IMG/VR virus record: IMGVR_UViG_3300044821_000131
Coordinates: 1-64,000 of that record
Length of the DNA: 64,000 nt
Reading direction: 5' to 3' (one strand)
The stretch's first letter is position 1. The number at the start of each line of letters is the position of its first letter. Below are positions 37,782-51,460 of the stretch, piece by piece. Below the pieces are notes generated by a model. The model made no database searches, had not been told where the DNA came from, and saw only the letters and a program-made list of their open reading frames with translations. Position numbers and translations under genes: made by a program.

Positions 37782-39187
37782 ATGGCAAAACATGACTCAC
37801 ACATTCCGACAATCGCCCTTACCGCTGGATTTCTGGCGGCTCCCGTCGCTGTACCAGTGGCACTGGTAATCTTTGGCGGCTATCTCATTTACTCGATTTT
37901 ACATTGCGGCAAATCAACACATGAAAACGACACTAACTCGGAACGACCTGGTTCTGATACTCCTTAACTCATATCCCCATCACGACTTTGATATTCCATG
38001 GAATTTCGAAAATTCCAAAACTATTACCGTCCCGGTTGGGGATCCGTTGATAACGGCATTGTTGGAATCATTTGCGGGAGTTGCTGGATCAGCTGACTCC
38101 GTCGAAGATATTTTGGGTTCGCTTTATAATGGGTTGAAATCTTGGCAGACAGACTTGAACGACACTTTGAATAATCTGCAGCGCCACGTGATGAATGTTT
38201 GCACGGCGCAGTACGCGGAATTCTTGGTCGAAAACTCGGCCGTTCACACCGAGAATATTTTTCTTTATTGGCATTCTTTTGCGCACAAGGGTTCGGTTTT
38301 TACCAATTTGACGCGGCTGCTGGTGCGTGATAGATATGAGACAGAATACCGGAAGGCTAGTGCGGAGTTATCGCCGACCCAGCATGGAGAGATGGAGCGA
38401 AACAAAAAAGTCTTGGCAAGCCTTCGACAGCAGCTTATGATCAATTTATCTGGTATTCCCGACGGCATCAGTAAAGAGCCTTTGTGGAAGACCGATAAAA
38501 AAGATGCCACCGATCCAGCAACTCCTGTTGACGAAACTAAGCGCCCGGTCGCCTAAGCAACGAGGGTTCTACGCCATGGTGAGGTCCGTTCAAAATGGCG
38601 AGCGCCCACTTCATAGCGTCACAAAATCTGTATCCGATGCGGCGCAGAAGCTGTTGCCGAAAGATGCTTCGCAGGAATCAAATGTTACCTACACCTCGGA
38701 ACCTCAATCGGTGAGTCCACCTGAAGCGTCTCGTAAGATGTCTTGCGCCCAGCGTTTCTTCGTCGCCGATTTTATCCCGAAGTTGGCCAACATCAGCAGC
38801 ATGATTCTTCGATCACACAAGGCTATCCATCAAGCTGGGGCTGCCCGACGTCAAGTGCTGGCCAAGGAGATCGACAAACTCCGTAAGCACAATGAGAAGC
38901 TGCAAACGCAGGCTCAGAAAGCTGAGGAAAAGGCTGTACAGTCTGAGCAGAAGGTTCGAGAGGCTGAGATGCAAGTAGCACAGGCCGGTAAGACGGTCGA
39001 ACAGATTCAGGCCATGCAAATGGCACAAAGAACTCCTCCTCCACCCGAACAGCCGCCGTATGGTAATATGTTGCTTGGTGGTGCGCCTGGTGGCGCTACT
39101 CCTGGCGCTACTCCTGTGCCGCAAGCTACTCCTGCGCCTCCGGCTAATCCCTCCATTCCCGGTATGACGATGGCGCCTGCGGTATAA
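37782..39187 (+). CDS. Hypothetical ORFs (37782-37967, 37921-38556, about 38576-39187)
   Basis: Co-oriented; the last has a coiled coil and Pro/Gly-rich tail. Confidence 0.55.
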
Positions 39188-39230
39188 TCGTCTTTCCTTC
39201 GGTTTTCAAGGTCGTGAACTTTCGTGTCCG

Positions 39231-39259
39231 TTGACTTAATACATATTTTGATTTAAAAA
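39231..39259 (+). promoter_or_regulatory. Sigma70-like promoter upstream of the region leading into attC array 2
   Basis: TTGACT-N17-TAAAAA just before ATG 39263. Confidence 0.55.
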
Positions 39260-39262
39260 TTC

Positions 39263-39787
39263 ATGAAGATACATCTTTTGGTTGGCCAGCGAAAAGAGAG
39301 CTATGCTGGCGAGTTTGCTCCTGAAGTTTTGGAAGCCATAGACGAATTCGGTAATTGCGAAAATGCCGGCGAATGGCTGCAGGGTAAGATGAAGGAGTAC
39401 CGCGTTGACGCTTCTTTTGAAGCACTAGTCATAGTTACATTGGAAGTTCCTACACTTAAAATTTTGGAACGTTTACGTCCGAATAATGAACCTATTGTCG
39501 CCGAGGTGGTAGACACAGATTTATTGACCCTATATCTAAAAGATTCAGACGGTATTTGGAAATCACACAGCTACGAAACGTTATCCGATTTGGCCGGGGA
39601 GTTTGCCAAACGTAACATAAAAATCGGCAATGACGTGAAGATCGGCAATTTCGTGAAGATCGGCAATGACGTGACGATCGGCAATCGCGTGGCGATTGGC
39701 AATGACGTGATGATCGGCAATCGCGTGACGATCATTGATAACACATGTATACCTCCGGAGCTTATCATTCAAAAAAGACTAAGCTGA
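39263..39787 (+). CDS. Chimeric gene: unrelated N-terminus plus hexapeptide module (paralog 3, 6 repeats, no C-terminal domain)
   Basis: LYLKDSDGIWKSHSYETLSDLA block begins mid-gene; 18-bp units at 39620-39727; ends at a broken attC. Confidence 0.75.
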   Translation: MKIHLLVGQRKESYAGEFAPEVLEAIDEFGNCENAGEWLQGKMKEYRVDASFEALVIVTLEVPTLKILERLRPNNEPIVAEVVDTDLLTLYLKDSDGIWKSHSYETLSDLAGEFAKRNIKIGNDVKIGNFVKIGNDVTIGNRVAIGNDVMIGNRVTIIDNTCIPPELIIQKRLS

Positions 39788-39896
39788 GACATCGGCACGG
39801 TCGAGAAATGACGGATACATTTGAAATCGCAACCAAACTAAAATCTATGGCCTATGGAAAGAGTAGTGCCGATTGTTCTCCAACACCGTGTTCGGC
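39781..39896 (-). other. attC site lacking its R' box
   Basis: aagctgagacatcggcac...gtgccgattgttctccaacaccgtGTTCGGC; arms nearly identical to the 42442-42552 site. Confidence 0.75.
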
Positions 39897-40062
39897 GGAG
39901 CCGTCTTGGACGGCCTTCGTCGCGCGAATGAAAAAGGAAGCTCCAACGTTGGTCCCGGATGAAAATGACGACAAGTGGAAAAATTTGCATGCTGTTTATA
40001 TCATGGGCTACGCTGCTTGCCTCGATACCATGAGAGCAGAATTGGACGTACAGATCGACTGA
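39808..40062 (+). CDS. Small ORF starting inside the attC at 39781
   Basis: MTDTFEIATK...DCSPTPCSAEPSW; DCSPTPCS is encoded by the attC arm. Confidence 0.55.
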   Translation: MTDTFEIATKLKSMAYGKSSADCSPTPCSAEPSWTAFVARMKKEAPTLVPDENDDKWKNLHAVYIMGYAACLDTMRAELDVQID

Positions 40063-40064
40063 CT

Positions 40065-40673
40065 ATGACTTTTGCAACCTTTGATACAGCGACCACTGGA
40101 AAGATTAATTGGAAACAGCCGCTGTCTTGGCATGGACAGCCACGTATTGTCTCCACAGGTGCGGTTCTGTTCGACGATGTCGGACGAGAGCTCGCCAGCT
40201 ATTATTCCCTGATCAGACCGGAGGGGTTTCTTATTCCTTCCGATGCCACCAAGGTTCACGGCATCACCACAGAGAAGGCGGAGCAGTATGGAGTCAATTA
40301 CAACATCGCCATGACTTCGGTGATCTCAATGCTCAACTTGGCGGATTATATTCTGATCTTCAATGAAGCGTTCGATCGCAACATGGTTAATATCGAGGCG
40401 TTGATGCGCAGTAATGCGAATGGATACTTGGAGCGTAATCGTTCTCGTATCCGGTGTATGATGCAGGTTATGACCGCGCGTTGTAAGCTAGCTCATCCCT
40501 ACGACACCGGTGACTACAAGGGGCCCAGTTTGGATGAGGCGTGGCAATACACTTTCGGTTTACCACGAGATGTATCTAAAGTGCATAACGCTGGGGTCGA
40601 TGCGCGTGAGACCGGATTGATAGCTTTGGAACTGATACGTAGAAATGACTGGAATATCAACGACGCAACTTAA
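40065..40673 (+). CDS. DEDDh 3'-5' exonuclease-like protein (ExoI Glu replaced by Ala)
   Basis: FDTATTG, FNEAFD, PSLDEA, HNAGVDA. Confidence 0.75.
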   Translation: MTFATFDTATTGKINWKQPLSWHGQPRIVSTGAVLFDDVGRELASYYSLIRPEGFLIPSDATKVHGITTEKAEQYGVNYNIAMTSVISMLNLADYILIFNEAFDRNMVNIEALMRSNANGYLERNRSRIRCMMQVMTARCKLAHPYDTGDYKGPSLDEAWQYTFGLPRDVSKVHNAGVDARETGLIALELIRRNDWNINDAT

Positions 40674-40679
40674 ACACAC

Positions 40680-41162
40680 ATGAAAGAATTACATCCTGAC
40701 GATCCCCGACTTAAGATAAAAATGAATCGATTGGCCAACACCAAGAATCAGCACCAAGGTATACACAAAAAAGTTTTGTGTGTTTGCTCGGCCGGGCTGC
40801 TCCGATCGCCGACACTGGCCTGGGTTTTATCGAATCCTCCATGGAACTGCAACACCCGCGCTTGTGGTGCTGAACCCGAGTACGCATTGATTCCATTAGA
40901 CTTGGCTCTTGTCGAATGGGCTGATGAAATCGTTTGTGCTGAACAGGAGCACGTGGACGCTGCAAAGGCGTTCGTGAAGCATTGCTCGGATGCAGACAAA
41001 CGGATTTTCAATCTGGATCTACCCGATTATCACAGCACGCGCTCTACCAGTCTGGTCCATCTTATTAACGAGCGTTTGGACGCGGTTAAATTTGAAGGTA
41101 CGGTACCGACAGATCTGTCGTCCACTAAGCGTCGGGATTTATCGTCATCGTCAATTGTCTGA
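40680..41162 (+). CDS. Low-molecular-weight protein-tyrosine-phosphatase-like protein
   Basis: N-terminal VLCVCSAGLLRSPT (CX5RS), WADEIVC, LDLPD. Confidence 0.82.
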   Translation: MKELHPDDPRLKIKMNRLANTKNQHQGIHKKVLCVCSAGLLRSPTLAWVLSNPPWNCNTRACGAEPEYALIPLDLALVEWADEIVCAEQEHVDAAKAFVKHCSDADKRIFNLDLPDYHSTRSTSLVHLINERLDAVKFEGTVPTDLSSTKRRDLSSSSIV

Positions 41163-41207
41163 ACTTGGAATGAGGATAATTTTTGGAGCCGACGGCTGCA
41201 ATTCCGT

Positions 41208-43357
41208 ATGAGCAATCCGCGTGATCCCCTTACACCTGAACAAATCAAGCACTGGCGTGACATGCTTGTCGGTATGTTCGGTCCTTGGGCCTTCATAATG
41301 CCAGAGGAGGACATCCAGCGTATGAGGGAGCATTTACAAAGTGATTTGGATTCACATGAAATCAATGACTCAAAAGAATAAACGGAAACGGTTGGTGTGA
41401 CTTGTTATGCCACGAGAACACTCAATGTCGTGCGAATGGCCAGAGGGTTGTAGCTGTGGAGCATCAGCGTGGAATCGATTGGAGCGTGAGCGTGACTGGT
41501 ATCGCTGTCGCGTAAAACTGTTGGAACAGCACAAGTCAATGCTCCGAGAGCCAGAACTAACGCTGGTATGTGATATCATGGCAAACGGCCAACTAATGCC
41601 CGACCCAGACGGGAAACGATATGGGCCTAACGCAGACTTGTCAGGCATATCGATAACAAAACTGACATAAAACATATGACTGAAACTCCACAAACCAAAA
41701 AAACTCTGCTGCCGAAATACGAAGACGGAAGCGGATATAGGATCGAAAGAGAACTGTGTGTCTTCTGCCACAAACCGCTGCTCGACTCATTCCACTTTGC
41801 CAGCGATGACGGTAAGCAACACTGGCACACATACTGCGCAAACAGAAAAGGCGTAACGTCCCGGATGAGCCGCCCGCGATAGGCGACTCACGAACACCAA
41901 AAGATTTATGATCAAAAAGAAAGCGTCAACGCGGGTTGGCTCCATCGGGCGGGTTATGCCTCAGTTGGTGATATGCGACCATCATGGGCATGACTACTGC
42001 GAGGGATGCCAACATAACGAACCCCACAAAGCAAACAGTGAGGACGACGGCGAACTCTGCACATGCGGCGGAGTCTGTGGGGCAAACGGGCCAAACTTCA
42101 ACGTGCGCTGCCTGCGACATAACGCCTCAAGCTGAGGCACGTCGGACTAAAGACTTTATGAAACCTGTGAAACCAAAAATCCGTAGCGATAAAAACAAAC
42201 CGTCCAACCGACGTTGCCTCCGGCGCGGTGTTAGGCGACACGATTGGATAAACGGCCCCGATATGATTCCGAAGCCTGTAAAAAAGGCGATCAAAGAATG
42301 GCGGGCCATCACAAGTCCAATGGAGAAAATCGGATTCATCCTGCACGCTTTCGACCCGACAATACAGTTCCGCTGTCCCGACAGTAACCGAGTGTTTGAT
42401 ATGTCAATAAGTGCCGTCAAACGCATAAATGCCGCCTTGTCGCCTAACGCCTCAAGCTGAGACATCGGCGACCTGCGATGTCCAGCAACCCAAAACCTTA
42501 TGCTCAAAACTGAAAGCGCCAATACCGATTGTTCTCCAGCGCCGGGTTCGGGTGCTGGCTTGGATAACTGAATGGGTCGAAGCAATCTGGAAGGCGTTTC
42601 GACCGCCAAAACGGAAGCGGCTGGAACTGCGGCTCTGCACATGGACTGCCGCAGACAAGCTGATTCGGGAAGGTGGCGGCGCTTGGACGGTAGCCGCCGA
42701 AGATGACCACAACATGGTGCTTGGGTGTGTGTGGTTGGAACGCCTGGAACAATATCCCGACTTCTCGAAGCAGCAGTCGAACGGTGAAGTCAGCGATGGC
42801 GGGACGCTGACTTCCGAATTGAAATCCAAACGCGAACCCGCCATTCGCTGAATTGTTATGGCACTAATACACGAAGAAACTGAACACGAGCTTGGAGCGA
42901 AACTGATGGTATCGGAACGCCAAGAAGGTGAAACCCGCGCCCCGTGGAAAATCATCACGCTCGACGCAGACCGATTCGAGAATCTAACACCAACGGAACT
43001 CCGAAAGCTCGGAAAGTGGCTCATACACCAAGGGAGGCGCATCGGAAGTGAATACAAGTCCAACGGTGCGTTGAAGGCCAAGAGCCATAACGAAAAGCTG
43101 ATCGACAGCGGAAGGAAATTATGAGCTTTAAAAACGGCGGATATAACAACGGGCTTGGTCGGCCAAAGGCGAAGAAGCTGTTCGCTCCGGCGCGTTGTTC
43201 TACGGCGTGGTTGAGCGTGGAATCCCGTTGGCCAGTCAAGGGTGAACTCGAAACCAAAAGATGCCTGACAATCCTAGACGCGGTAATAGAAGGAAAACGC
43301 GCCCTCCAATGTGGGGCGTGGCGCGTAACAATAACTCAGTGCAACGGAGCGCCGTAG
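41208..43357 (+). CDS. Small cassette ORFs (41208-41381, 41407-41670, 41676-41882, 41908-42135, 42158-42460, up to 42429-42851, 42858-43124, 43121-43357)
   Basis: One ORF per inter-attC segment; no function recognised. Confidence 0.6.
41851..41959 (-). other. attC site
   Basis: Plus strand GCGTAAC-gtcccg-gatgagccgcccgcg...cgcggg[t]tggctc[c]atc-gggcgg-GTTATGC. Confidence 0.82.
42117..42236 (-). other. attC site
   Basis: Minus strand GCCTAAC-ACCGC-GCC[G]GAGG-CA[A]CGTCGG...CCGACG-TG-CCTCAGC-TTGAGGC-GTTATGT. Confidence 0.88.
42442..42552 (-). other. attC site
   Basis: Minus strand CCCGAAC-CCGGC-GCT[G]GAGA-ACAATCGG...CCGATG-TCTCAGC-TTGAGGC-GTTAGGC. Confidence 0.85.
42776..42861 (-). other. attC site with a short deletion next to R''
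   Basis: Plus strand GTCGAAC-ggtga-agtcagcgatggcggg...cccgcca[t]tcgctgaatt-GTTATGG. Confidence 0.75.
43085..43203 (-). other. attC site
   Basis: Minus strand GTAGAAC-AACGC-GCC[G]GAGC-GA[A]CAGC...GCTG-TC-GATCAGC-TTTTC-GTTATGG. Confidence 0.82.
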
Positions 43358-43405
43358 AACAGTTAATTAAACCAACGTTGGTCGTTTAACTCATACGAAA
43401 GCCGA

Positions 43406-43434
43406 TTGCCAAACGGGGCCTCAGTAAGTAGTAT
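43406..43434 (+). promoter_or_regulatory. Sigma70-like promoter for the RNAP-fragment genes
   Basis: TTGCCA-N17-TAGTAT, 6 nt before ATG 43441. Confidence 0.6.
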
Positions 43435-43440
43435 TCAAAA

Positions 43441-44985
43441 ATGACCGACGACGTAGCCGCACCCCCGGGAGTGGAAATTACAGCTTGGGATGACTTTCCC
43501 AAGAAACGCCAGCAGATTCTCACTGGCGCTAAAACTGCCCTGCAAGAATCATTTCCCCAATCCTATGGCGGGGTGCGGCTTGAACTACACGACCTCGATT
43601 ACGACAATCCCAAGGAATTCACATTGTCGGAACAGAAGGACGCCCTGATGAAGAACCAGTTTCTCCATCACAAACTCAAGGGTACGTTAAAATTATTCGA
43701 TGAGAAAACCGGTGCGTTGCTGGATCAGAAAACTCAGACGCTCATGCGAGTTCCTTACCTTACCGAGCGTGGTACATTTCTACATAATGGTAACGAGATC
43801 ACCACCAACAGCCAGGCTCGGCTCATGCCGGGCATCTATACGCGGCGTAAGAATTCTGGTGAAATTGAGTCTCAGGTGAACGCCAAGCGTGGATCGGGAT
43901 CATCCTTCCGTGTACGTCTCGAACCCGAGTCCGGTTTGTTTAAGGTCGACATCGGTCAGAGTAGTCTGCGGCTTTATTCGTTGTTGAAAGATATTGGAGT
44001 GTCCGATCAGCAGATTGAGAAGACTTGGGGACCAGAACTGTTGAAGAAGAATCAGGACTCCTACGATGCCAGGGTGTTCGAGAAGGCTTACGATCGATTG
44101 GTGCGGCGTCCCGATCCGAAGGCCACGCGCGAGCAGAAGGTAGAGGCAATCAAGCAGGCTTTGGACAATACGCAGGTGGATCGGTCGGTGGTCATGAGGA
44201 CATTGCCGAATCTGTTCGCCACCAAGTTCTCCTCGATGTTGGCATTCGATCCTACCATGCCTCGGCCGCAGAGCGAGAAGAAGGAATTCAATCACGACGA
44301 TTGCCTGATGCTGGCGGAGCTGTTGAATCAGAAGTTTCATGCTGGCATTCCGTTGGATGCCCCGACCTCAGAGATCGTAGCCATGGTGATGGGTGAAATA
44401 CAGAAGCTCATGCCGTCGGTGAATGAGCAGATGCTGGCACAGACTGTAGGGCAACAGCAGAAAGAGGCGCGATCGAAACAAGGTTATCTGATGTTGAATT
44501 TCGAACCGGAAGACGCCATGAGGTTTTCCAAGTGGTCAAGGCAGAATATCCCGGATTCGAAACTGGGTGCGTCCGGACGTGAAGACACCCCGCATATCAC
44601 TTTGCGTTGGGGTATCAACACGGGTGATATTGGGCACCTGAAATCATTCTTCTCAGAACAGTCCCCAGTCCAAGCCACGCTCGGCGCTCTGACTCGATTT
44701 CCTGGCGTCGACGACGGAAACCAAGATGCACTAGTGGCGCCGGTAGAGTCCGAATCCATTCACAAGCTACACCATGCTGTCGTATCGACGTTTCATTCTC
44801 ATCTCGGACCCGTCAAGTTCAATACCTACCGGCCACATGTTACTCTAGCCTATTTAAGGCGTGGCGAGATGCCGGAATTGGAAGGTAACAAGGAGTTTCA
44901 TGGCCAGACATTCCAGTTGAAGAAGGTGGTGTATTCCAATCCTCGCACCAGCTCGTATATTGACATTCCGCTGGGTACAAATTAG
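43441..44985 (+). CDS. RNA polymerase beta subunit N-terminal fragment fused to a 2H phosphoesterase domain
   Basis: VPYLTERGTFLHNGNEITTNSQARLMPG matches RpoB IPLMTxxGTFIINGxERVVVSQLxRSPG; C-terminal PHITL (44593) and PHVTL (44836). Confidence 0.82.
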   Translation: MTDDVAAPPGVEITAWDDFPKKRQQILTGAKTALQESFPQSYGGVRLELHDLDYDNPKEFTLSEQKDALMKNQFLHHKLKGTLKLFDEKTGALLDQKTQTLMRVPYLTERGTFLHNGNEITTNSQARLMPGIYTRRKNSGEIESQVNAKRGSGSSFRVRLEPESGLFKVDIGQSSLRLYSLLKDIGVSDQQIEKTWGPELLKKNQDSYDARVFEKAYDRLVRRPDPKATREQKVEAIKQALDNTQVDRSVVMRTLPNLFATKFSSMLAFDPTMPRPQSEKKEFNHDDCLMLAELLNQKFHAGIPLDAPTSEIVAMVMGEIQKLMPSVNEQMLAQTVGQQQKEARSKQGYLMLNFEPEDAMRFSKWSRQNIPDSKLGASGREDTPHITLRWGINTGDIGHLKSFFSEQSPVQATLGALTRFPGVDDGNQDALVAPVESESIHKLHHAVVSTFHSHLGPVKFNTYRPHVTLAYLRRGEMPELEGNKEFHGQTFQLKKVVYSNPRTSSYIDIPLGTN

Positions 44986-44994
44986 TATTCGGGC

Positions 44995-45711
44995 ATGCCT
45001 AGTCATAGCAAAGCGCAGCAACGGGCGTTCGGAATGGCCGCCGCTCTCCAAGAAGGTAAACTTTCTCCCAGCAAGGTGTCTCCCAGTGTACGCCGCATTG
45101 CCCGGGATGTATCTCATACGGATGTGCGTCATTTCGCCACTACCAAGCACACTGGCCTTCCTGAGCATGTTGCCAAGCACGCTTCATATCTGAAGCCAAT
45201 GACGGCCGGCACGGCTGTAGGGGATTTTGGCAGACTTGAAGGCAACCCCAATACTTGGAACATGCCGATGCCGCGCTATAACCAAGCTCCTCCAGCGTGG
45301 GCACCCGCGGAGAAGCCCCTGACATTCATGAGCAGTGTCGGGCAGATGGGCAAAGGCTTATATCGTATGGGTATGGGTGGTGCATCCGCGGCTACGATTG
45401 GTCAAAATGGATCTCCTGGCGTGTTGGAGAACACGTTGGGCAATGCCGTACATGGAGTTGGCGATGTATGGTCGGGACAGGGCGCGTGGGGAAAAGTGCC
45501 TGGGTACATCCGGAAGCCTCTGGCACCGATTGCCGGGCCTTGGTATGGTGCTATGAACACCCCCGGGCAGTTCAGTGGTCCCTACGGCAGGTTCTTGGAC
45601 AACTCCGGTCAGGATCGTGCCATGGCTGCTGCTCCTTATACGTGGGCACAGCATAGTTGGCGCGATATGGTGAATGGCTGGAATCAATTCATGAACAATA
45701 AAATGCAGTAA
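44995..45711 (+). CDS. DUF3008-like N-terminus plus Gly/Met/Trp-rich C-terminus
   Basis: MPSHSKAQQRAFGMAAA...VRHFATTKHTGLPEHV resembles the DUF3008 pattern MPAKSKAQQ...FASTKxKGLP. Confidence 0.55.
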   Translation: MPSHSKAQQRAFGMAAALQEGKLSPSKVSPSVRRIARDVSHTDVRHFATTKHTGLPEHVAKHASYLKPMTAGTAVGDFGRLEGNPNTWNMPMPRYNQAPPAWAPAEKPLTFMSSVGQMGKGLYRMGMGGASAATIGQNGSPGVLENTLGNAVHGVGDVWSGQGAWGKVPGYIRKPLAPIAGPWYGAMNTPGQFSGPYGRFLDNSGQDRAMAAAPYTWAQHSWRDMVNGWNQFMNNKMQ

Positions 45712-47163
45712 ATGCTCACTTACGAAAAGATTTTCGCGCAGGCTAAAAAAGCTTTCGTCGAATCCAAATCTGCTACTGCCGAACCGGCTCAGCCCACAGA
45801 GGATACCGTTCCGGTCAATCCTGACGCGATCTTGGCTATCACCAGCAAGTTGTTAGCTGTGACTAGAGGTGAGGCGGATCCGGACGAACGTGATAGCCTT
45901 CAATTTAAAAGAGTTCACACTCCCGATAAACTGTTCGCCGAACGCATTAAGATGGATGCCCATAAACTGCGTAAGATCGCGATGCGTCGCGTTTCGCGTG
46001 TCCGCAATCTATCACCTATCGGTGTGGCGCATTTCGATCCTTACACGGGAGGATTGATCGTTGGGCATCCGTTATCCAGTCCTTTGGAAGAGACGAACCC
46101 GTTATCGCTTACGGAGCAGGCGAGACGCGTGACGCAGATGGGACCTGGTGGTATTCCTTCCTCGGATTCGATCACGGAAGAGGCACAATCTGTGTCTCCT
46201 TCGATATTCGGTTTCTTGTCAGCGATCGAAGGGCCGGAATGCTTTTCAGATGACACAGAGGTGTTCACTTATAACGGGTGGAAGTTTTGGAGTAGCATTA
46301 CAAATTCGGATCGTCTGGCCTGTCGTGATGAACACGGGCAAATGTTTTTCTCGGCCCCTAGTCGCCTAATAGCTGCACCTTATACTGGACCTATGGTCCA
46401 AGCTGACGCTCGGATGTTTCATTTAAAGGTTACGCCGAATCACAGGTTACTTGTCGCTAAGCACATGAGAAAATCACAAGTTCCCACGACTTGGTTTAAA
46501 ATTTTTGCCGGTGATTTTTCTGATCATAATGTTTTGCGATTCGACACCGGCAGCCTTCCATATTCTGGAAATTCTGTTTTAACATGGTCTCTACCCGATT
46601 ATGCTCTTGATAAGTTCATTCCGGAATACTTGTTCGATGCACCAATTTCTGCCCGACAGAAGTTGTTTGAAGCCCTACTTTTGGGAGATGGTCGGATTAA
46701 CAAAAACCACACCAATTTTACCAGCAGCAGCAAACAATTGGCTACTGATTTTGAACGTTTGGCCGTAGGCTTAGGACACACCACCAATTTTAGAAAATAT
46801 TTCGACAAGCGACCCCATGTACAAGCTTGGACTTATGAGATTAGTATTTTGAAGTTGCGCGAGCGCGTGGCGGCTAGAAAACCCAAGTCTGGTGTTGGCG
46901 GGCTGTTTTCGATAGTCGATTATTCTGGTATTGTGTATTGTGCCACGGTTCCCGGCGGCCTGTTGCTGACTCGACGTGGCGTATCTACCGGTGTATGGTC
47001 AGGCAATAGTGAACGCATCGGTGTAGATACGCGTCTCGCTTGGGGCGCTAACGTTGGCTCAGACGGAAAAATTTATCAGAAACTCTTGAATCGCAGGACT
47101 GGTCAGCATCAGTATGTGTCACCGGACGATCTCGTCGGTCGCACGGTTGGTATCCCTGAATAG
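45712..47163 (+). CDS. RNA polymerase beta subunit middle fragment, intein-containing
   Basis: DERDSLQFKRV (cf DDIDHLGNRR), LEETNPLSLTEQARRVTQMGPGGI (cf [24 protein letters not shown]), FGFLSAIEGPE-SERIG (cf YGRICPIETPEGPNIG). Confidence 0.88.
   Translation: MLTYEKIFAQAKKAFVESKSATAEPAQPTEDTVPVNPDAILAITSKLLAVTRGEADPDERDSLQFKRVHTPDKLFAERIKMDAHKLRKIAMRRVSRVRNLSPIGVAHFDPYTGGLIVGHPLSSPLEETNPLSLTEQARRVTQMGPGGIPSSDSITEEAQSVSPSIFGFLSAIEGPECFSDDTEVFTYNGWKFWSSITNSDRLACRDEHGQMFFSAPSRLIAAPYTGPMVQADARMFHLKVTPNHRLLVAKHMRKSQVPTTWFKIFAGDFSDHNVLRFDTGSLPYSGNSVLTWSLPDYALDKFIPEYLFDAPISARQKLFEALLLGDGRINKNHTNFTSSSKQLATDFERLAVGLGHTTNFRKYFDKRPHVQAWTYEISILKLRERVAARKPKSGVGGLFSIVDYSGIVYCATVPGGLLLTRRGVSTGVWSGNSERIGVDTRLAWGANVGSDGKIYQKLLNRRTGQHQYVSPDDLVGRTVGIPE
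46240..47007 (+). mobile_element. Intein (256 aa) with partly deleted LAGLIDADG domain
   Basis: Starts CFSDDTEV, VTPNHRL, only one ALLLGDG motif, ends VYCATVPGGLLLTRRG...WSGN, +1 Ser. Confidence 0.88.
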
Positions 47164-47192
47164 CACTATTTCTGACGGAACACTTAACAGTC

Positions 47193-47222
47193 ACGCGCAG
47201 TAATCCCTTACTGCGCGTTTTT
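47193..47222 (+). terminator. Intrinsic terminator hairpin, copy 1
   Basis: acgcgcagtaa-tccc-ttactgcgcgt-tttt; identical at 51424. Confidence 0.8.
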
Positions 47223-47229
47223 GCATTTT

Positions 47230-47901
47230 ATGAACCTATTATATCTAAAAGATTCAGACGGTAATTGGCGATCACATAGCTACGAAACGTTATCCGATTT
47301 GGCCGGGGAGTTTGCCAAACGTAACATAAAAATCGGCAATCGCGTGGCGATCGGCAATTACGTGACGCTCGGCAATTACGTGACGATCGGCAGTGACGTG
47401 ACGATCGGCAATTACGTGACGATCGGCAGTGACGTGACGATCGGCAATTACGTGACGATCGGCAATCGCGTGGCGATCGGCAATTACGTGACGATCGGCT
47501 ATGGCGTGACGATCGGCTATGGCGTGACGATCGGCAATCGCGTGAAGATCGGCAATGACGTAAAGATCGGCAATGACGTGACGATCGGCGATGACGTGGA
47601 GATCGGCGATGACGTGATGATCGGCAATTACGTGAGGATCGGCAATTACGTGGTTATTCCCAAAGCTGCGAACATCCAACTCCAATACGACCTGGTCACC
47701 ATCAACAACTTGGGATCCCGGAACGCGGCCTTATCTGCTGTTAAAATCAAGGATATCATCCATGTCGCGACTGGGTGCTTCAGTGGCACGATTGATGAGT
47801 TTGAGAAGAGGGTGAAGGAAGTGCATGAAGAGAGTGAGCATGGGATGCGTTACGGTCTGGTTATTGAAGTTATTCGTAAATGGTTTTCGGTACAACGGTA
47901 A
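47230..47901 (+). CDS. Hexapeptide-repeat protein, paralog 4 (18 repeats)
   Basis: 18 x 18-bp units at 47329-47652; shared N- and C-terminal blocks. Confidence 0.88.
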   Translation: MNLLYLKDSDGNWRSHSYETLSDLAGEFAKRNIKIGNRVAIGNYVTLGNYVTIGSDVTIGNYVTIGSDVTIGNYVTIGNRVAIGNYVTIGYGVTIGYGVTIGNRVKIGNDVKIGNDVTIGDDVEIGDDVMIGNYVRIGNYVVIPKAANIQLQYDLVTINNLGSRNAALSAVKIKDIIHVATGCFSGTIDEFEKRVKEVHEESEHGMRYGLVIEVIRKWFSVQR

Positions 47902-47929
47902 ACAAAAACAAACAACTGAAAGGAAACAT

Positions 47930-48355
47930 ATGAGTCTATTACAAGCATTATTCTGGCCGTGGCGTTTCGTCTCGGAGGTCATTGATACCCATCCAACCGC
48001 CGGACAGATACGTCAGGATCTGCAGCAGAATCGTCCGATAGTCGTATCCAATAACACCGGTGTGGCTGTGGGACTACGCCTCGACGGCACGGACAAAGTC
48101 TCACCGCTGGAGGACGTAATCACGCGCAAGGTTGGAAGTCCCGAGGAGCTGCCTCTGGCCTTGGCCTTCGGTGAAGGTGTTGTGTCCGGGTATGGTCTGG
48201 CGGTGAAACGTGCAATCAATCTTCGACGCTCGTCTCTTGCCGAGGATAATAAGTTGCGCCGAGCCGCCTTAGCCGCAGATGCAGCGGCGAGCGAACCGGA
48301 GCCGGCGTCGGAAGCGTTCGTTGGATCAGAATTGTTGCCGGCCTCTGCTGTCTAG
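47930..48355 (+). CDS. Hypothetical protein
   Basis: ATG after an A-rich leader; precedes the AAA operon. Confidence 0.55.
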   Translation: MSLLQALFWPWRFVSEVIDTHPTAGQIRQDLQQNRPIVVSNNTGVAVGLRLDGTDKVSPLEDVITRKVGSPEELPLALAFGEGVVSGYGLAVKRAINLRRSSLAEDNKLRRAALAADAAASEPEPASEAFVGSELLPASAV

Positions 48356-48372
48356 TCGAGATTACACTCAAC

Positions 48373-48408
48373 AAACGCCCGGATCGACTTTTGTCTTTCC
48401 GGGCGTTT
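48373..48408 (+). terminator. Hairpin
   Basis: aaacgcccgga...tccgggcgttt. Confidence 0.55.
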
Positions 48409-48420
48409 CTCTATTTAATA

Positions 48421-50004
48421 ATGAATTTTACTGAGAAATTGGCCGTCTATCTCAAGGCGGCGTATCCCATAATTGGCGTAGAGACGTACGAAGAAGGGCG
48501 TCTGTTGGAGACTGGAATTTATCCATTAAAAATGCCGGTTGAGCGCCGTCTATACCAGTGGGATTGCGCCACCGGTATGGTCGACACAACTGATCGAAAT
48601 AAGCCGGTGAAGCTGGACAAGACCGCGGATCCAATGGCTATGTTGGCCATCGTCTCTGGTAACGTTGAGAGCGCCATTTTCGTGCTAAAGGACATCCACG
48701 CGCATTTCAACAACGTCCGGCACATACGGATGCTTCGGTCTATGATTAAGACGTTATCGAACCGTAAGCAGACCATCGTGCTTGTGGCGCCGAGGCTGAA
48801 CCTTCCGTTTGATCTCCAGAAGGATGTTCAGATGATGGACTTTGCGCTGCCTACCAAAGCTGAATTGTCGGCCATGACAGAAACTTTTATCGAAACTTCG
48901 ATTCGGCGTAATGAGAACGCCGCGTACAAGGAGTTCCGTTTGTCGTTGTCCGATCGCGAGGCCATCGTCGAAGCAGCCACCGGCATGACTAGTATTGAGT
49001 TCTGTAACGCCTTGTCGTCTTGCTCCATTGGACAGAGCCAAGATAATGGCAAGCTTACGATGACCGGTGATTTCCCGAAACGCATCTTCGACGAGAAAAT
49101 TATTAATCTGAAGAATGGATTACTGGAGTACGTACCGGAGGCTGGTGGTTTCGACACGATCGGTGGTCTAACCCCAGTCAAGGAGTGGGCGAAACAACGC
49201 CGTCTCGGTTACGAGGAAGTCGCGCGCAAGGCGCACCTGCCATATCCTAAAGGCTGTCTCTTGGTAGGCTTGCGCGGATGCGGCAAATCGGTTCTGGCCA
49301 TGGCTATCGCTCAAGCATTCAACTTCCCGTTGTTCAAACTGGATATAGGCAAGATCTTCGGTAGCAAGGTGGGTGAATCCGAAGGCAATGTTAGAGAACT
49401 CATCCGTCTATTGGAAGGTCTCGGTCGTGCCGTCATCTACATGGACGAAATTGAGAAAGGTCTCAATAACAGTGCGGCGTCTGGTCAAGGTGATTCCGGC
49501 ACAGGTTCCCGGGTATTCGGGACTCTGATCTCTTGGATGGCCATTAAGAAGTGTCCGGTGTTTCTTATCGGTACAGCTAACAATATTGATGTCCTGCCAC
49601 CTGAGTTGATTCGTAAAGGTCGGTTCGATGAGATATGGTGGGTGGATCTGCCGACGTCCGAGGAGCGGGTGGATATCTTCAACAAACTGCTACAACACAA
49701 GTTTCAACGTGAGTTTGAGGTGACTGGCGTCAAAGACAAACTGATAACCAGCACCAAGGATTACAGTGGCGCCGAGATTGAGGCGGTTATTGAGGCTGCG
49801 TTGTATGAGATGTTGTCTTCCAAGGATAAGAATTTCAGGAAGATTCTGGAGTCGACGATCGAGCGTACCGAGCCACAGGCTCAGATCAATCCAGAGTATA
49901 TAAACAAGATGCGGGAGAAGTCTAAGGCCGGTTATCGCAAGGCTAATGATCCCGAAGTTCATAATGCAAGTGTATCAAACATGTATCGGAAGGTTCAGTT
50001 ATGA
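48421..50004 (+). CDS. AAA+ ATPase, Ycf46-like
   Basis: Degenerate first domain (IFVLKDIH), Walker A GLRGCGKS, Walker B IYMDEIEK, TANNIDVLPPELIRKGRFDE. Confidence 0.9.
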   Translation: MNFTEKLAVYLKAAYPIIGVETYEEGRLLETGIYPLKMPVERRLYQWDCATGMVDTTDRNKPVKLDKTADPMAMLAIVSGNVESAIFVLKDIHAHFNNVRHIRMLRSMIKTLSNRKQTIVLVAPRLNLPFDLQKDVQMMDFALPTKAELSAMTETFIETSIRRNENAAYKEFRLSLSDREAIVEAATGMTSIEFCNALSSCSIGQSQDNGKLTMTGDFPKRIFDEKIINLKNGLLEYVPEAGGFDTIGGLTPVKEWAKQRRLGYEEVARKAHLPYPKGCLLVGLRGCGKSVLAMAIAQAFNFPLFKLDIGKIFGSKVGESEGNVRELIRLLEGLGRAVIYMDEIEKGLNNSAASGQGDSGTGSRVFGTLISWMAIKKCPVFLIGTANNIDVLPPELIRKGRFDEIWWVDLPTSEERVDIFNKLLQHKFQREFEVTGVKDKLITSTKDYSGAEIEAVIEAALYEMLSSKDKNFRKILESTIERTEPQAQINPEYINKMREKSKAGYRKANDPEVHNASVSNMYRKVQL

Positions 50005-51068
50005 TTGATGTTTTTCCGTCTGCTAGTCAGACTCCAAAGTTGTCGGAAGCGGCTCAGGCCGCGTTGCAGCGTACGTTTCAAGAAGGTTGTATTATTATTC
50101 TCAGCATCGGCAAGAAAAGCTGGAGCACCAAGCTCACTCCCGACCTGCTCGGCCTCGACGCGCTTCCCCCCGCCTGTAAAGGTCGATGGGATCTATTGCA
50201 GGAGGAATCCGATCCTGAGAACCCTGAAGAGCAGGACCTGACCAAGAAGGATCCGGCAGCGAAGATCAGTAGTATCGAAGGCAAGGCTCGAAATTACCTG
50301 CGCAAGCAATCTCTGTCCTTCGGCAACGAAGCCCGGGCCAATTTTCGCTTTGTTCGCACGGATATGATGATCGATACTCTGTTGAGTTTGCAGGAGTTCA
50401 AAAAGCAGTACTTCGATGCGGTCGATGAATTGATTTTGGCACTGCCAGCTATCAAAGAGAATCTCAAGCTTAACAAGCCGAAGCAGTGGGAGAAGTTGAA
50501 AGACTTTTATGACGTGGGTAGCGATTTTATCAAGAAGCAGTATTACTTCGTATATGAATCCATGGCCATGGCCTTCCCGAAAGCTTTGGACAGCATGGAT
50601 ATCGAAGATCTGCTTCGGCGACAAACAATCGAGGGTCGGGTTACTGACGAGTATCGGGCCAAGGCGGAGCTGGTACTGCGTGAGCAGTCGATGCAGGCCA
50701 AAGAAACGGCCAAGGGATTCGTTGAGGACACGATCCGGGCGATACGTGGCCAAGCCGTCAAGGCTTTTCAGGAAATCGGGGCTAAGATTCAAAAGGGTGA
50801 CGCGCTTAATAAGAAGAATATCGAGAAGATTCGGGAGGCAGTTCAGTATGTTAAACGTATGGACTTTCTCGGAGACCGTGACTTCGTAACTCATATGTCG
50901 AACGTGGAAAACATGTTGGATGGCACCTCCACCTTCAAGGACAACGATCAAGCCGTGGCCGAATTGGATAAGATTCTGAAGCAGACCGTGGCGTTTGTGG
51001 GGAGTACGACTGACTCCGCAGTAGCGTCCATGACTGAATCGTATTTCGCCAGAAACTTGTCCTTATAG
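50001..51068 (+). CDS. Helical AAA-associated protein (possibly DUF3150-like)
   Basis: ATGA-coupled to the AAA gene; family guess from context and overall pattern only. Confidence 0.4.
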   Translation: MIDVFPSASQTPKLSEAAQAALQRTFQEGCIIILSIGKKSWSTKLTPDLLGLDALPPACKGRWDLLQEESDPENPEEQDLTKKDPAAKISSIEGKARNYLRKQSLSFGNEARANFRFVRTDMMIDTLLSLQEFKKQYFDAVDELILALPAIKENLKLNKPKQWEKLKDFYDVGSDFIKKQYYFVYESMAMAFPKALDSMDIEDLLRRQTIEGRVTDEYRAKAELVLREQSMQAKETAKGFVEDTIRAIRGQAVKAFQEIGAKIQKGDALNKKNIEKIREAVQYVKRMDFLGDRDFVTHMSNVENMLDGTSTFKDNDQAVAELDKILKQTVAFVGSTTDSAVASMTESYFARNLSL

Positions 51069-51092
51069 TTTGGTCGATTTGACGGTTGTCAT

Positions 51093-51120
51093 TTGACGAC
51101 GCATTCATCCGTGCTATCTT
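51093..51120 (+). promoter_or_regulatory. Sigma70-like promoter
   Basis: TTGACG-N16-TATCTT with extended TG. Confidence 0.45.
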
Positions 51121-51175
51121 GATTGCACGTTAAGTACCTGGTGTTGATGTCGACATCCGGGTCTAAATTTAAAAT

Positions 51176-51406
51176 ATGAATGCAAAAGTATCGTCTGATT
51201 GTGCCGAGTTGTCGTCTCCTTCGTCCGTAGTCCAGTTCTTCATTAAGTTGTTTGAAGACAAGCCCGTGTCCGATATCCGGCGTGCTCTCCTTGCAGTCAA
51301 TAGTGGCGGCTATGCCGATCTATTGCCGAATGAGAGCACGGCCTGTCTGGCGGGCAGTGGTCTCATTGGTCTGCTGGTGGACCGAAAAGCCTGTTTAGTC
51401 GAATAG
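51176..51406 (+). CDS. Hypothetical protein
   Basis: ATG after an AT-rich leader. Confidence 0.5.
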   Translation: MNAKVSSDCAELSSPSSVVQFFIKLFEDKPVSDIRRALLAVNSGGYADLLPNESTACLAGSGLIGLLVDRKACLVE

Positions 51407-51423
51407 TGGAATTATCAACAAGT

Positions 51424-51453
51424 ACGCGCAGTAATCCCTTACTGCGCGTTTTT
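51424..51453 (+). terminator. Intrinsic terminator hairpin, copy 2
   Basis: Identical to 47193-47222; identity extends 40 bp through the ATG. Confidence 0.8.
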
Positions 51454-51460
51454 GCATTTT

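What the first reader, a model, noticed from the sequence alone, without database searches (positions are those of the whole stretch)
43441..47163. Bacterial-like RNA polymerase beta subunit split into separate genes
Seen: an N-terminal piece and a middle piece are separate ORFs with an unrelated gene between them. The catalytic C-terminal part and beta-prime are not in the window. Known: phiKZ-like jumbo phages have split multisubunit RNAPs. Here the motifs stay close to bacterial RpoB and sigma70-like promoters are also present, so this may be a distinct lineage of phage RNAP.
Basis: partly seen in the sequence, partly recalled or inferred. Interest (0 to 1): 0.68.

Follow-up and report, generated by a model that had tools for sequence, protein, structure and literature searches.

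The report
Split phage RNA polymerase with intein

Summary
ORF 43441-44985 is the N-terminal piece of a bacterial-type RNA polymerase beta subunit and ORF 45712-47163 is the middle piece, with an unrelated DUF3008 gene (44995-45711) between them. The rest of the enzyme lies outside the window in the same complete 204,257-bp phage genome: catalytic beta-C at 92605-94524, beta'-N at 105718-107766 and beta'-C at 117096-118940.

Two features were missed.
- The middle piece is interrupted by a 256-residue intein (C177-N432, nt 46240-47007). It sits in the 'ETPEG' motif, and about 100 residues of its LAGLIDADG endonuclease are deleted. Four relatives lack the intein precisely. At least 70 relatives carry full or mini versions at the same site.
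- The N piece ends in a 2H phosphoesterase domain (residues 343-514) whose two H-x-T motifs are invariant in 23 homologous fusions.

In the wider family, 2H, NUDIX and pyrophosphatase domains are swapped on the ends of the beta-N and beta'-N fragments. The closest isolates, Salmonella phage Arash and Vibrio phage D69, encode beta fused to beta'-N in one 1525-aa protein.

I found no sigma or alpha gene, and sigma70-like promoter hits are not enriched. Verdict: a new variant of the known split phage polymerases, from a large uncultivated jumbo-phage family.

The parts
43441..44466 (+). beta-N core: residues 1-342 of P0001, equivalent to the N-terminal beta1/beta2 (protrusion/lobe) part of bacterial RpoB (about E. 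coli beta 34-240), followed by a helical tail
   Evidence: PDB phmmer. NCBIfam rpoB positions 36-249. AF2 model at pLDDT 80-95 and Foldseek hits to Mtb beta B1-B2 domains. 48-59% identical homologues that end here, the 'bare' forms of 340-370 aa.
44467..44985 (+). 2H phosphoesterase domain fused in frame to beta-N (residues 343-514 of P0001; catalytic H385-x-T387 and H466-x-T468); coordinates include the stop codon
   Evidence: Pfam 2_5_RNA_ligase2 E 1.8e-9, above its cut-off. phrog_755. Both H-x-T motifs invariant in 23 homologous beta-N::2H fusions. Domain model pLDDT 93. VIA Z 15 to LigT/CPDase/Usb1 and Z 12-13 to Acb1.
44995..45711 (+). Intervening gene P0002: DUF3008 N-domain (residues 1-60) plus a Gly/Trp/Pro-rich C-terminal part
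   Evidence: Pfam DUF3008 E 1e-7. DUF3008 genes lie within three genes of beta-N in relatives L020, L021 and L023. The C-part is weakly similar (E 1.7e-4) to the ORF that sits between beta-N and beta-mid in L023.
45712..46239 (+). beta-mid N-extein (residues 1-176 of P0003): end of the lobe plus the fork domain with 'GPGG' and 'IEGPE', equivalent to E. coli beta 420-565
   Evidence: Pfam Rpb2_3. PDB alignment. 52-57% identical to intein-less beta-mid proteins.
46240..47007 (+). Intein, 256 aa (C177-N432). Block A starts with Cys, block B is T241-x-x-H244, one remaining LAGLIDADG motif lies at residues 322-328, and the C-terminal residue is Asn. About 100 aa including the first LAGLIDADG motif are deleted.
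   Evidence: Exact gap against four intein-less homologues. Pfam LAGLIDADG_3 and Hint hits. Allelic inteins of 322-361 aa and 141-163 aa at the same site in relatives. Related inteins in Lak megaphage and mycobacteriophages. GC 45.4% against 51.7-51.9% in the exteins.
47008..47163 (+). beta-mid C-extein (residues 433-483, starting with the +1 Ser) and the stop codon
   Evidence: Aligns to the C-terminal 51 residues of intein-less homologues; S433 is invariant.
47193..47218 (+). Terminator-like hairpin (11 bp stem plus T tract), 30 nt after the beta-mid stop; an identical copy lies at 51424-51449
   Evidence: 0 of 100 shuffles give a second copy.

Best explanation
The locus encodes two of the five polypeptides of a phage-encoded, bacterial-type beta/beta' RNA polymerase core. 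The phage is an uncultivated 204-kb jumbo phage.

Beta is made from three gene products:
- beta-N (this window)
- beta-mid (this window)
- beta-C, the catalytic Rpb2_6 part, at 92.6 kb

Beta' is made from two: beta'-N at 105.7 kb and beta'-C at 117.1 kb. The beta' break is at the same place as in cyanobacterial gamma/beta'.

Beta-mid is translated as a 483-aa precursor. A 256-aa class-1 intein must excise itself between the equivalents of E. coli E565 and G566. It uses Cys177, Asn432 and the +1 Ser433 to rejoin the 'ETPEG'-type motif in the active-site cleft, giving a 227-aa fragment that can assemble. The intein descends from a LAGLIDADG homing intein that is widespread at this exact site in the phage family. 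Here half of the endonuclease is gone, so it is probably no longer mobile.

Beta-N carries at its C-terminus, which is the break point inside the beta lobe, an intact 2H phosphoesterase. This domain rides on the polymerase. Its most likely activity is hydrolysis of 2',3'-cyclic phosphate or cyclic-nucleotide phosphodiester bonds.

Shown here: fragment identities, collinearity, intein boundaries, conservation of the fusion and of the catalytic residues. Inferred: assembly into one enzyme, splicing activity, substrate of the 2H domain, independence from host sigma.
For: - Completeness and collinearity. The rpoB model is covered at positions 36-249 (P0001), 315-461 (P0003) and 533-1049 (beta-C). 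The rpoC model is covered at 160-534 (beta'-N) and 555-1064 (beta'-C). The Mg-binding DFDGD motif is present in beta'-N, and the conserved Lys of the beta active site is aligned.
- The same fragment boundaries recur in a 196.5-kb relative with dispersed genes and in over 100 homologues per fragment, many on contigs of about 200 kb.
- Intein. It is precisely absent from four homologues of 215-229 aa that read 'IEGPE|S'. Allelic inteins sit at the same site in at least 70 relatives. Splicing residues are conserved. GC is lower than in the exteins.
- 2H domain. Pfam score is above cut-off. There are 23 independent fusions at 24-40% domain identity with invariant H-x-T motifs. The model is confident and shows the 2H fold at Z 15.
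- Not an interrupted single gene. No Rfam intron family is found in 42500-48000. Relatives have different intervening genes.
- Relation to isolates. Arash gp206 and D69_0261 align collinearly to beta-N, beta-mid, beta-C and beta'-N. Portal and major capsid proteins are also shared. Arash beta and beta' are the most abundant proteins in virion mass spectrometry (PMC10585845).
Against: - There is no experimental evidence for assembly, splicing or activity.
- The penultimate intein residue is Gly, not the usual His. This is a family-wide feature, so it is probably tolerated.
- The first roughly 160 positions of bacterial beta' (Zn ribbon and N-terminal clamp) were not found anywhere in the genome.
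- No specificity factor was identified.
- The 2H subfamily is unresolved. Pfam, NCBIfam and structure favour LigT/ThpR-type, while a PDB profile search favours Acb1 and the poxvirus cGAMP phosphodiesterase at E about 1e-3.
- No RNA ligase is encoded, so a complete phage RNA-repair pathway is not evident.
Confidence: 0.85

Rival explanations
1. The pieces are decaying remnants of a captured bacterial rpoB gene (pseudogene fragments) and the phage relies on host RNAP.
For: The gene is fragmented, interrupted by a mobile element and separated by unrelated genes. No sigma or alpha is encoded.
Against: All beta and beta' modules are present once, intact and collinear. The same fragment boundaries are kept at 45-60% identity in over 100 relatives, with invariant functional motifs such as GPGG, EGPE and DFDGD. 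The homologous enzyme is highly abundant in Arash virions.
Confidence: 0.03
2. beta-N and beta-mid are exons of one gene interrupted by an intron or by an assembly or frameshift error, so the split is not real at the protein level.
For: Group I and group II introns do invade these genes in the family. One beta-N homologue carries group II intron reverse-transcriptase domains (P0081). Some relatives have beta-N and beta-mid in one polypeptide of about 584 aa.
Against: No intron family is detected in 42500-48000 at E<=1. The intervening DNA is a protein gene that is conserved in relatives. Independent assemblies show the same two ORFs with zero, one or two different genes between them. beta-N continues in frame into a conserved 2H domain and a stop codon in 23 homologues.
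Confidence: 0.04
3. The fused 2H domain is an Acb1-like counter-defence enzyme that destroys cyclic-oligonucleotide immune signals (CBASS or type III CRISPR). The NUDIX/HAD domains on beta'-N may serve a similar role. The RNAP fragment serves as a carrier, possibly delivered with the virion.
For: The best PDB profile matches of the 23-member 2H alignment are Acb1 (9q2g, E 7e-4) and the penguinpox cGAMP phosphodiesterase (E 8e-4). Pfam Acb1 hits appear in P0001 (E 8e-4), P0054 and P0080. The same sites in relatives carry NUDIX, InPase, LigD_N or Acb1+InPase; InPase is, by my recollection, a family first defined in injected polyvalent phage proteins. Arash RNAP is virion-associated.
Against: The Acb1 Pfam score of 19.7 bits is below the cut-off of 27. 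Structure ranks LigT/CPDase/Usb1 (Z 15) above Acb1 (Z 12-13). PADLOC gives nothing, though it models defence rather than counter-defence. Virion packaging is not shown for this phage.
Confidence: 0.25
4. The 2H domain, together with NUDIX and HAD on beta'-N, processes RNA ends or transcription by-products. It would act as a built-in RNA 2',3'-cyclic phosphodiesterase, 3'-phosphatase or 5'-pyrophosphohydrolase on nascent or damaged RNA.
For: Pfam 2_5_RNA_ligase2 above cut-off and an NCBIfam hit to RNA 2',3'-cyclic phosphodiesterase. The structure is closest to LigT/ThpR/CPDase. HAD-IIIA/polynucleotide-kinase-phosphatase-like and NUDIX domains are present on beta'-N. There is a precedent of an HD phosphohydrolase fused to the beta C-part in AR9-type virion RNAPs (PMC7824862).
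Against: No RNA ligase of the Rnl1/Rnl2/RtcB families is in the genome. The function of the AR9 HD domain is itself unknown. The InPase and Acb1-type alternatives in relatives fit a nucleotide-signal or nucleotide-pool role at least as well.
Confidence: 0.4

Closest known systems
RNAP of Salmonella phage Arash (gp206, gp216) and Vibrio phages D69/D181/D148
   Same: Closest isolates by sequence, at 28-34% identity across every RNAP fragment, in the same order. The beta' break is the same. The first roughly 160 beta' positions are likewise not matched: the homology to our beta'-N starts at its residue 303. Homologous portal and major capsid proteins are shared.
   Different: There, beta (N+mid+C) and beta'-N are one 1525-1527-aa polypeptide. 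It has no intein at this site and no 2H or NUDIX domains in the aligned regions. Here the same material is four separate, dispersed genes. Arash is annotated with sigma factors; none was found here.
phiKZ/AR9-type (Chimalliviridae and relatives) split virion and non-virion RNAPs
   Same: A beta/beta' core built from fragments. beta' is broken after the DPBB at the cyanobacterial site. Virion RNAP beta is in three pieces. No alpha, omega or sigma. A phosphohydrolase (HD) is fused to a beta fragment in AR9-type phages (PMC7598289; PMC7824862).
   Different: Only one set of fragments was detected here (single hits for Rpb2_6 and Rpb1_2). The sequences are far closer to bacterial beta/beta'. The accessory domains differ (2H, NUDIX, HAD). 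Whether the beta break points coincide was not tested. An intein is present.
mReC lineage (Weinheimer & Aylward 2020, PMC7481178)
   Same: Uncultivated tailed phages, some over 200 kb, with bacterial-like beta and beta' detectable by cellular HMMs.
   Different: mReC was defined by beta and beta' matches of at least 800 aa and an NADxDGD motif. Every fragment here is under 700 aa and the motif reads G-M-D-F-D-G-D, so this genome would have been filtered out. Phylogenetic relation was not tested. The relatives' IMG sample numbers were not found in the paper's supplements.
Inteins in the second-largest RNAP subunit of eukaryotes and giant viruses (Goodwin et al. 2006, PMC1635734)
   Same: Homing inteins are inserted in the most conserved, cleft-facing motifs of RPB2/RPC2. 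Two of them lie in the fork domain, so splicing must precede assembly.
   Different: Those hosts are eukaryotic nuclear or NCLDV genes. Here the host is a phage fragment of a bacterial-type beta. Whether the site is allelic with the Bde RPB2-c or Ddi RPC2-a site was not determined.
2H phosphoesterases: LigT/ThpR RNA 2',3'-cyclic phosphodiesterase, and phage Acb1
   Same: Two H-x-T motifs and the 2H fold. Z is 15 to LigT/CPDase and 12-13 to Acb1, with weak profile hits to Acb1.
   Different: Known members are free-standing or sit in other contexts. Here the domain is covalently attached to an RNAP fragment. Substrate unknown.

Membership tests
Bacterial-type RNAP beta subunit (RpoB) | Collinear coverage of the rpoB model, including the fork (Rpb2_3) and catalytic (Rpb2_6) domains | tested here: met
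   NCBIfam NF001616 positions 36-249, 315-461 and 533-1049 across three ORFs. Pfam Rpb2_3 and Rpb2_6 above cut-off.
Bacterial-type RNAP beta subunit (RpoB) | Single polypeptide of about 1100-1400 aa | tested here: not met
   Three ORFs of 514, 483 and 639 aa at 43.4, 45.7 and 92.6 kb. All NCBIfam scores are far below the equivalog cut-offs.
Bacterial-type RNAP beta subunit (RpoB) | Partner beta' with the Mg-binding DFDGD motif, bridge helix and trigger loop region | tested here: met
   beta'-N aligns to B. subtilis beta' 169-539 and contains D-F-D-G-D. beta'-C aligns to beta' positions 668-1164.
phiKZ-like split multisubunit phage RNAP | beta and beta' each encoded as separate fragments; beta' broken at the cyanobacterial gamma/beta' site | tested here: met
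   beta'-C residues 19-335 align to cyanobacterial RpoC2 from position 3-11, and beta'-N aligns to the end of gamma. The site is described in PMC7598289.
phiKZ-like split multisubunit phage RNAP | Two paralogous sets (virion and non-virion) | tested here: not met
   One match each for Rpb2_6 and Rpb1_2 at E<=10. Seven other large ORFs have no RNAP PHROG. A very divergent second set cannot be excluded.
phiKZ-like split multisubunit phage RNAP | Sequence membership in the phiKZ-type subunit families | tested here: not met
   phiKZ-type PHROGs (3295, 3015, 2987 and others) match only 60-190 residues, at E between 1e-22 and 1e-4. Full-length cellular-type PHROGs 24349 and 25354 match at E 1e-45 to 1e-53.
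Class 1 intein with LAGLIDADG homing endonuclease | N-terminal Cys/Ser, block B T-x-x-H, C-terminal Asn, +1 Ser/Thr/Cys | tested here: met
   C177, T241-x-x-H244, N432 and S433. The penultimate residue is Gly instead of His, as in all allelic inteins.
Class 1 intein with LAGLIDADG homing endonuclease | Precise presence/absence polymorphism at a conserved host site | tested here: met
   Four homologues read 'EGPE|S' without any insert. At least 70 carry inserts of 141-361 aa at the same point.
Class 1 intein with LAGLIDADG homing endonuclease | Complete endonuclease domain with two LAGLIDADG motifs | tested here: not met
   About 100 residues, including the first motif, are absent relative to allelic inteins P0123-P0128 (alignment A4). 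The Pfam LAGLIDADG_3 score is below its cut-off.
Class 1 intein with LAGLIDADG homing endonuclease | Protein splicing activity | not testable with these tools
   Needs expression of the precursor.
2H phosphoesterase superfamily | Two H-x-T/S motifs on a duplicated alpha/beta lobe fold | tested here: met
   H385-x-T387 and H466-x-T468 are invariant in 23 sequences. Pfam PF13563 scores 38.2 bits against a cut-off of 27. Z is 15.1 over 161 residues at rmsd 3.2 to 1iuh.
Acb1 anti-CBASS phosphodiesterase | Match to the Acb1 family model above threshold | tested here: not met
   PF23474 scores 19.7 bits against a cut-off of 27. The PDB profile hit to Acb1 has E 7e-4. Structural Z is 12-13, below LigT-type.
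mReC phages (Weinheimer & Aylward 2020) | beta and beta' matches of at least 800 aa each, with an NADxDGD motif | tested here: not met
   The criteria are quoted. The fragments here are 483-682 aa and the motif is G-M-D-F-D-G-D.
mReC phages (Weinheimer & Aylward 2020) | Placement inside the mReC clade in a beta/beta' phylogeny | not tested

The most novel reading that the evidence does not exclude
In this jumbo-phage family the free ends created by splitting the polymerase act as docking sites for an exchangeable set of nucleotide and RNA-end hydrolases. The ends are the C-terminus of beta-N in the lobe and the N-terminus of beta'-N. The hydrolases seen are 2H/Acb1-like, NUDIX, inorganic-pyrophosphatase-like, HAD and LigD-type phosphoesterase domains. 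The polymerase would thus double as a carrier of counter-defence or RNA-processing enzymes. If it is virion-packaged as in phage Arash, these enzymes would be injected together with the genome.
Probability: 0.3. Interest if true: 0.8.

Novelty: new variant of a known kind. Interest (0 to 1): 0.62.

Why it matters
Split multisubunit RNAPs are so far studied almost only in phiKZ/AR9-type phages, whose subunits are too divergent for easy comparison with cellular enzymes. This family keeps clear bacterial-type sequence while showing every architecture:
- one fused beta::beta'-N chain in the isolates Arash and D69;
- two, three or more fragments in the uncultivated relatives.

It is therefore a natural series for asking where a beta/beta' core can be cut and still assemble.

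The intein sits in one of the most conserved motifs of all RNAPs. Relatives show it full-length, half-deleted, as a mini-intein, or absent. That gives a clean system for studying intein homing and decay, and it makes polymerase assembly depend on protein splicing.

The recurrent covalent attachment of 2H, NUDIX and pyrophosphatase domains to polymerase fragments is, as far as I know, undescribed. It points either to co-transcriptional RNA-end chemistry or to polymerase-borne counter-defence. Both can be tested with recombinant proteins.

Tried and rejected
- Sigma70-type promoters. The consensus scan of 39000-51500 gave 15 sites against 13.0+-3.9 in shuffles. The two best sites share 'TAGTATTC' just upstream of the beta-N and DUF3008 start codons, but that word occurs only 3+1 times in the genome, about as expected. 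I dropped it as a phage promoter motif.
- Sigma, alpha and the beta' N-terminus. Sigma70_r2, Sigma70_r4 and RNA_pol_A_bac gave no hit. Rpb1_1 hit only inside beta'-N. Arash 'sigma' gp196 has no homologue here.
- Intron hypothesis. Rfam at E<=1 over 42500-48000 found nothing.
- 2H as a separate gene in close relatives. The 169-aa ORF after the 'bare' beta-N in L023 is not a 2H domain. The 196.5-kb relative has no 2H anywhere.
- RNA-repair pathway. No Rnl1, Rnl2 or RtcB ligase in the genome.
- PADLOC gave no hit for any of four proteins.
- Near-identical DNA in the phage collection: none.
- mReC supplements did not contain the IMG sample numbers of the relatives.
- Foldseek on the whole P0001 model was swamped by RpoB chains, so the 2H domain was folded alone. 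Even then the 2H subfamily stayed unresolved.
- The beta-N tree is the quick version only; the careful search did not finish.
- Not used: the big representative search (the claim does not rest on absence), complex prediction (assembly follows from homology, so a pass would not change my odds), the read-mapping tools, and the metagenome contigs and genome-contig scans.

Full report
**What the window is.** The window is the first 64 kb of a single 204,257-bp contig, which IMG/VR classes as a complete virus record with direct terminal repeats. Gene content is that of a tailed jumbo phage. It includes a family-A DNA polymerase with exonuclease and UDG-like domains, helicases, a HerA-like ATPase, a primase-like Toprim protein and an intein-bearing portal. 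Nearly all long ORFs are on the + strand.

**The observation.**
- P0001 (43441-44985, 514 aa) aligns over residues about 15-250 to the N-terminal part of bacterial RpoB. The supporting hits are PDB beta chains at E down to 1e-6 (E. coli beta 34-195 aligned), NCBIfam rpoB positions 36-249, and an AlphaFold model that Foldseek matches to the Mtb beta B1-B2 domains at E 5e-11.
- P0003 (45712-47163, 483 aa) aligns over residues 34-176 to E. coli beta 420-565, that is, the end of the lobe and the fork (Pfam Rpb2_3 above cut-off).
- P0002 (44995-45711) lies between them. It is a DUF3008 protein with no RNAP similarity.

**The rest of the polymerase.** It fails: each is present once.
- An Rpb2_6 catalytic beta-C at 92605-94524 (E 6e-54).
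- A beta'-N with Rpb1_1/Rpb1_2 and the D-F-D-G-D motif at 105718-107766.
- A beta'-C with Rpb1_5 at 117096-118940.

Against NCBI's rpoB and rpoC models the five ORFs are collinear. They leave uncovered only short inter-fragment stretches (partly filled by the unaligned ends of the fragments) and the first roughly 160 positions of beta'. beta is covered at 36-249, 315-461 and 533-1049, and beta' at 160-534 and 555-1064. The beta' break coincides with the cyanobacterial gamma/beta' break, as reported for phiKZ-type enzymes (PMC7598289). I found no sigma70 region 2 or 4 and no alpha subunit.

**First missed feature: an intein.** P0003 continues after 'IEGPE' with a Cys-initiated block. Pfam shows weak Hint and LAGLIDADG_3 hits.
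- Four relatives have beta-mid proteins of 215-229 aa. Three of them, aligned here, match P0003 on both sides and read 'IEGPE|S', leaving a clean 256-column gap.
- The intein is therefore C177-N432 (nt 46240-47007) with S433 as the +1 residue. Block B is T241-x-x-H244.
- Its GC content is 45.4% against 51.7-51.9% in the exteins.
- The word search found over 100 beta-mid homologues of 540-610 aa. A motif scan shows inserts at the very same point: mostly 322-361 aa with a full LAGLIDADG endonuclease, and about a dozen mini-inteins of 141-163 aa.
- Against the full-length alleles (59-68% identical over the whole alignment, inteins included), this copy lacks about 100 residues, including the first LAGLIDADG motif. 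It keeps the splicing blocks but has a half-deleted endonuclease.
- The insertion point corresponds to E. coli E565|G566 in the 'ETPEG' motif lining the cleft. As argued for RPB2/RPC2 fork inteins (PMC1635734), splicing must precede assembly.
- Related inteins occur in Lak megaphage and in mycobacteriophage gp3.

**Second missed feature: a fused 2H phosphoesterase.** Residues 343-514 of P0001 match Pfam 2_5_RNA_ligase2 above threshold and phrog_755.
- The fusion is not an artefact. Twenty-three homologues from independent assemblies, several on contigs of 206-225 kb, have the same beta-N::2H architecture. The 2H domain is 24-40% identical among them, and both H-x-T motifs are invariant.
- The domain folds confidently (pLDDT 93) into the 2H fold.
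- The subfamily is unresolved. Structural Z is about 15 to T. thermophilus and E. coli LigT, D. radiodurans CPDase and Usb1, and 12-13 to Acb1 and viral 2',5'-phosphodiesterases. A sequence profile against PDB puts Acb1 and the penguinpox cGAMP phosphodiesterase first, but only at E about 1e-3.

**Family context.**
- beta-N homologues come in several forms among the best 120: 'bare' (36), with 2H (23), with an InPase pyrophosphatase domain (10), with NUDIX (10), or with long unassigned tails (40). There are also occasional inteins and one apparent group II intron insertion.
- On a quick tree of the beta-N core the 2H label needs 11 changes, at least 3 of them forced by well-supported branches. 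InPase forms one clade.
- beta'-N homologues show the mirror image at their N-terminus: bare forms of about 375 aa, or NUDIX, NUDIX+2H, InPase, Acb1+InPase, LigD_N, inteins, or fusion to beta-C.
- In this genome, beta'-N begins with NUDIX (residues 25-90) and an HAD-IIIA/polynucleotide-kinase-phosphatase-like domain (residues 157-257) before the beta' homology starts at about residue 303.
- The 196.5-kb relative G001 has none of these extras but has the same fragmentation with dispersed genes.
- Some relatives have beta-N and beta-mid in one chain of about 584 aa.
- The closest isolates, Salmonella phage Arash and Vibrio phages D69/D181/D148, encode beta-N, beta-mid, beta-C and beta'-N as one 1525-1527-aa protein plus a separate beta'-C. 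They also share portal and capsid homologues with this phage.
- In Arash these two proteins are among the most abundant in virion mass spectrometry (PMC10585845).

**The intervening gene.** DUF3008 genes lie within three genes of beta-N in three relatives. The C-terminal part of P0002 is weakly similar to the small Gly/Trp-rich ORF that sits between beta-N and beta-mid in L023 (E 1.7e-4). An intervening small gene is thus a recurrent feature of this subclade. Whether it is an RNAP accessory factor is unknown.

**Interpretation.** The best-supported reading is a five-piece bacterial-type RNAP core whose middle beta fragment matures by protein splicing, and whose beta-N fragment carries an active 2H phosphoesterase.
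- Rivals I consider unlikely: pseudogene remnants, and an intron or assembly artefact. The arguments against them are conservation, independent assemblies and a negative Rfam scan.
- The role of the 2H domain is open. An RNA-end or by-product processing role fits the LigT-like structure and the HAD and NUDIX partners. However, no RNA ligase is encoded.
- An Acb1-like counter-defence role fits the weak Acb1 profile hits and the InPase/NUDIX/Acb1 alternatives seen in relatives, but it fails the Acb1 family threshold.
- A precedent exists for a hydrolase riding on a phage RNAP fragment: the HD domain of AR9-type virion RNAPs, whose function is unknown.

**Comparison and novelty.**
- The enzyme works like the phiKZ/AR9 split RNAPs but is not a member of those sequence families, and only one set was found.
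- It fails the operational definition of the mReC lineage, which requires at least 800 aa per subunit and an NADxDGD motif. Its phylogenetic relation to mReC was not tested.
- Sigma70-like promoters are not enriched.
- I rate it a new variant of a known kind. The fragmentation pattern, the site-specific intein family and the exchangeable hydrolase fusions are, to my knowledge, undescribed. The existence of split phage RNAPs and of Arash-like RNAP genes is already known.

**Limits.**
- No phylogeny with cellular, mReC and phiKZ sequences was computed.
- The beta-N tree is a quick search with a midpoint root.
- The counts of architectures come from the best 120 hits of length-restricted word searches, so they are not a census.
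- Assembly, splicing, enzyme activity and virion packaging are all inferred.

Noticed in passing
window 54572-54991 (+): A full-length tmRNA gene. ARAGORN predicts the tag peptide, and Rfam RF00023 scores 103 bits against a gathering score of 47. It is phage-encoded.
   Followed up: partly
window 22874-25624 (+): A 916-aa ORF homologous to the Arash and D69 portal proteins contains a second intein (Pfam Intein_splicing, residues about 141-423).
   Followed up: no
window 47177-47852 and 51408-51846: A duplicated cassette at 86-94% identity. An identical 26-nt GC-rich hairpin with a T tract (47193-47218 and 51424-51449) precedes each of two paralogous hexapeptide-repeat ORFs (47221-47901 and 51452-51886). 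The copies bracket a 176-aa ORF, an AAA ATPase ORF and a 355-aa ORF.
   Followed up: partly
genome 105718-107766 (L006:1718-3766): beta'-N carries N-terminal NUDIX (residues 25-90) and HAD-IIIA/polynucleotide-kinase-phosphatase-like (157-257) domains in place of the first roughly 160 positions of bacterial beta'. No separate gene for that beta' N-terminus was found.
   Followed up: partly
window 8217-12044 (+): A 1275-aa protein combines a UDG-superfamily domain, a 3'-5' exonuclease and a family-A DNA polymerase.
   Followed up: no
window 45712-46239 (P0003 residues 123-141): The residues equivalent to the main rifampicin contacts of E. coli beta (Q513, D516, H526, S531) are S123, E126, Q136 and T141 (alignment). 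This suggests the phage enzyme would not bind rifampicin like the host enzyme.
   Followed up: no
L011 (Arash 130093-134670) and L016 (D69 143288-147871): The proteins annotated 'RNA polymerase subunit beta' (Arash gp206) and 'hypothetical protein' (D69_0261) are in fact beta fused to the N-terminal half of beta'. This is not stated in the passages of the Arash paper that I read.
   Followed up: partly
window 44995-45711 and relatives L020, L021, L023: DUF3008 genes stay within three genes of beta-N in several relatives. A small Gly/Trp-rich ORF recurs between beta-N and beta-mid. P0002 looks like a fusion of the two kinds.
   Followed up: partly
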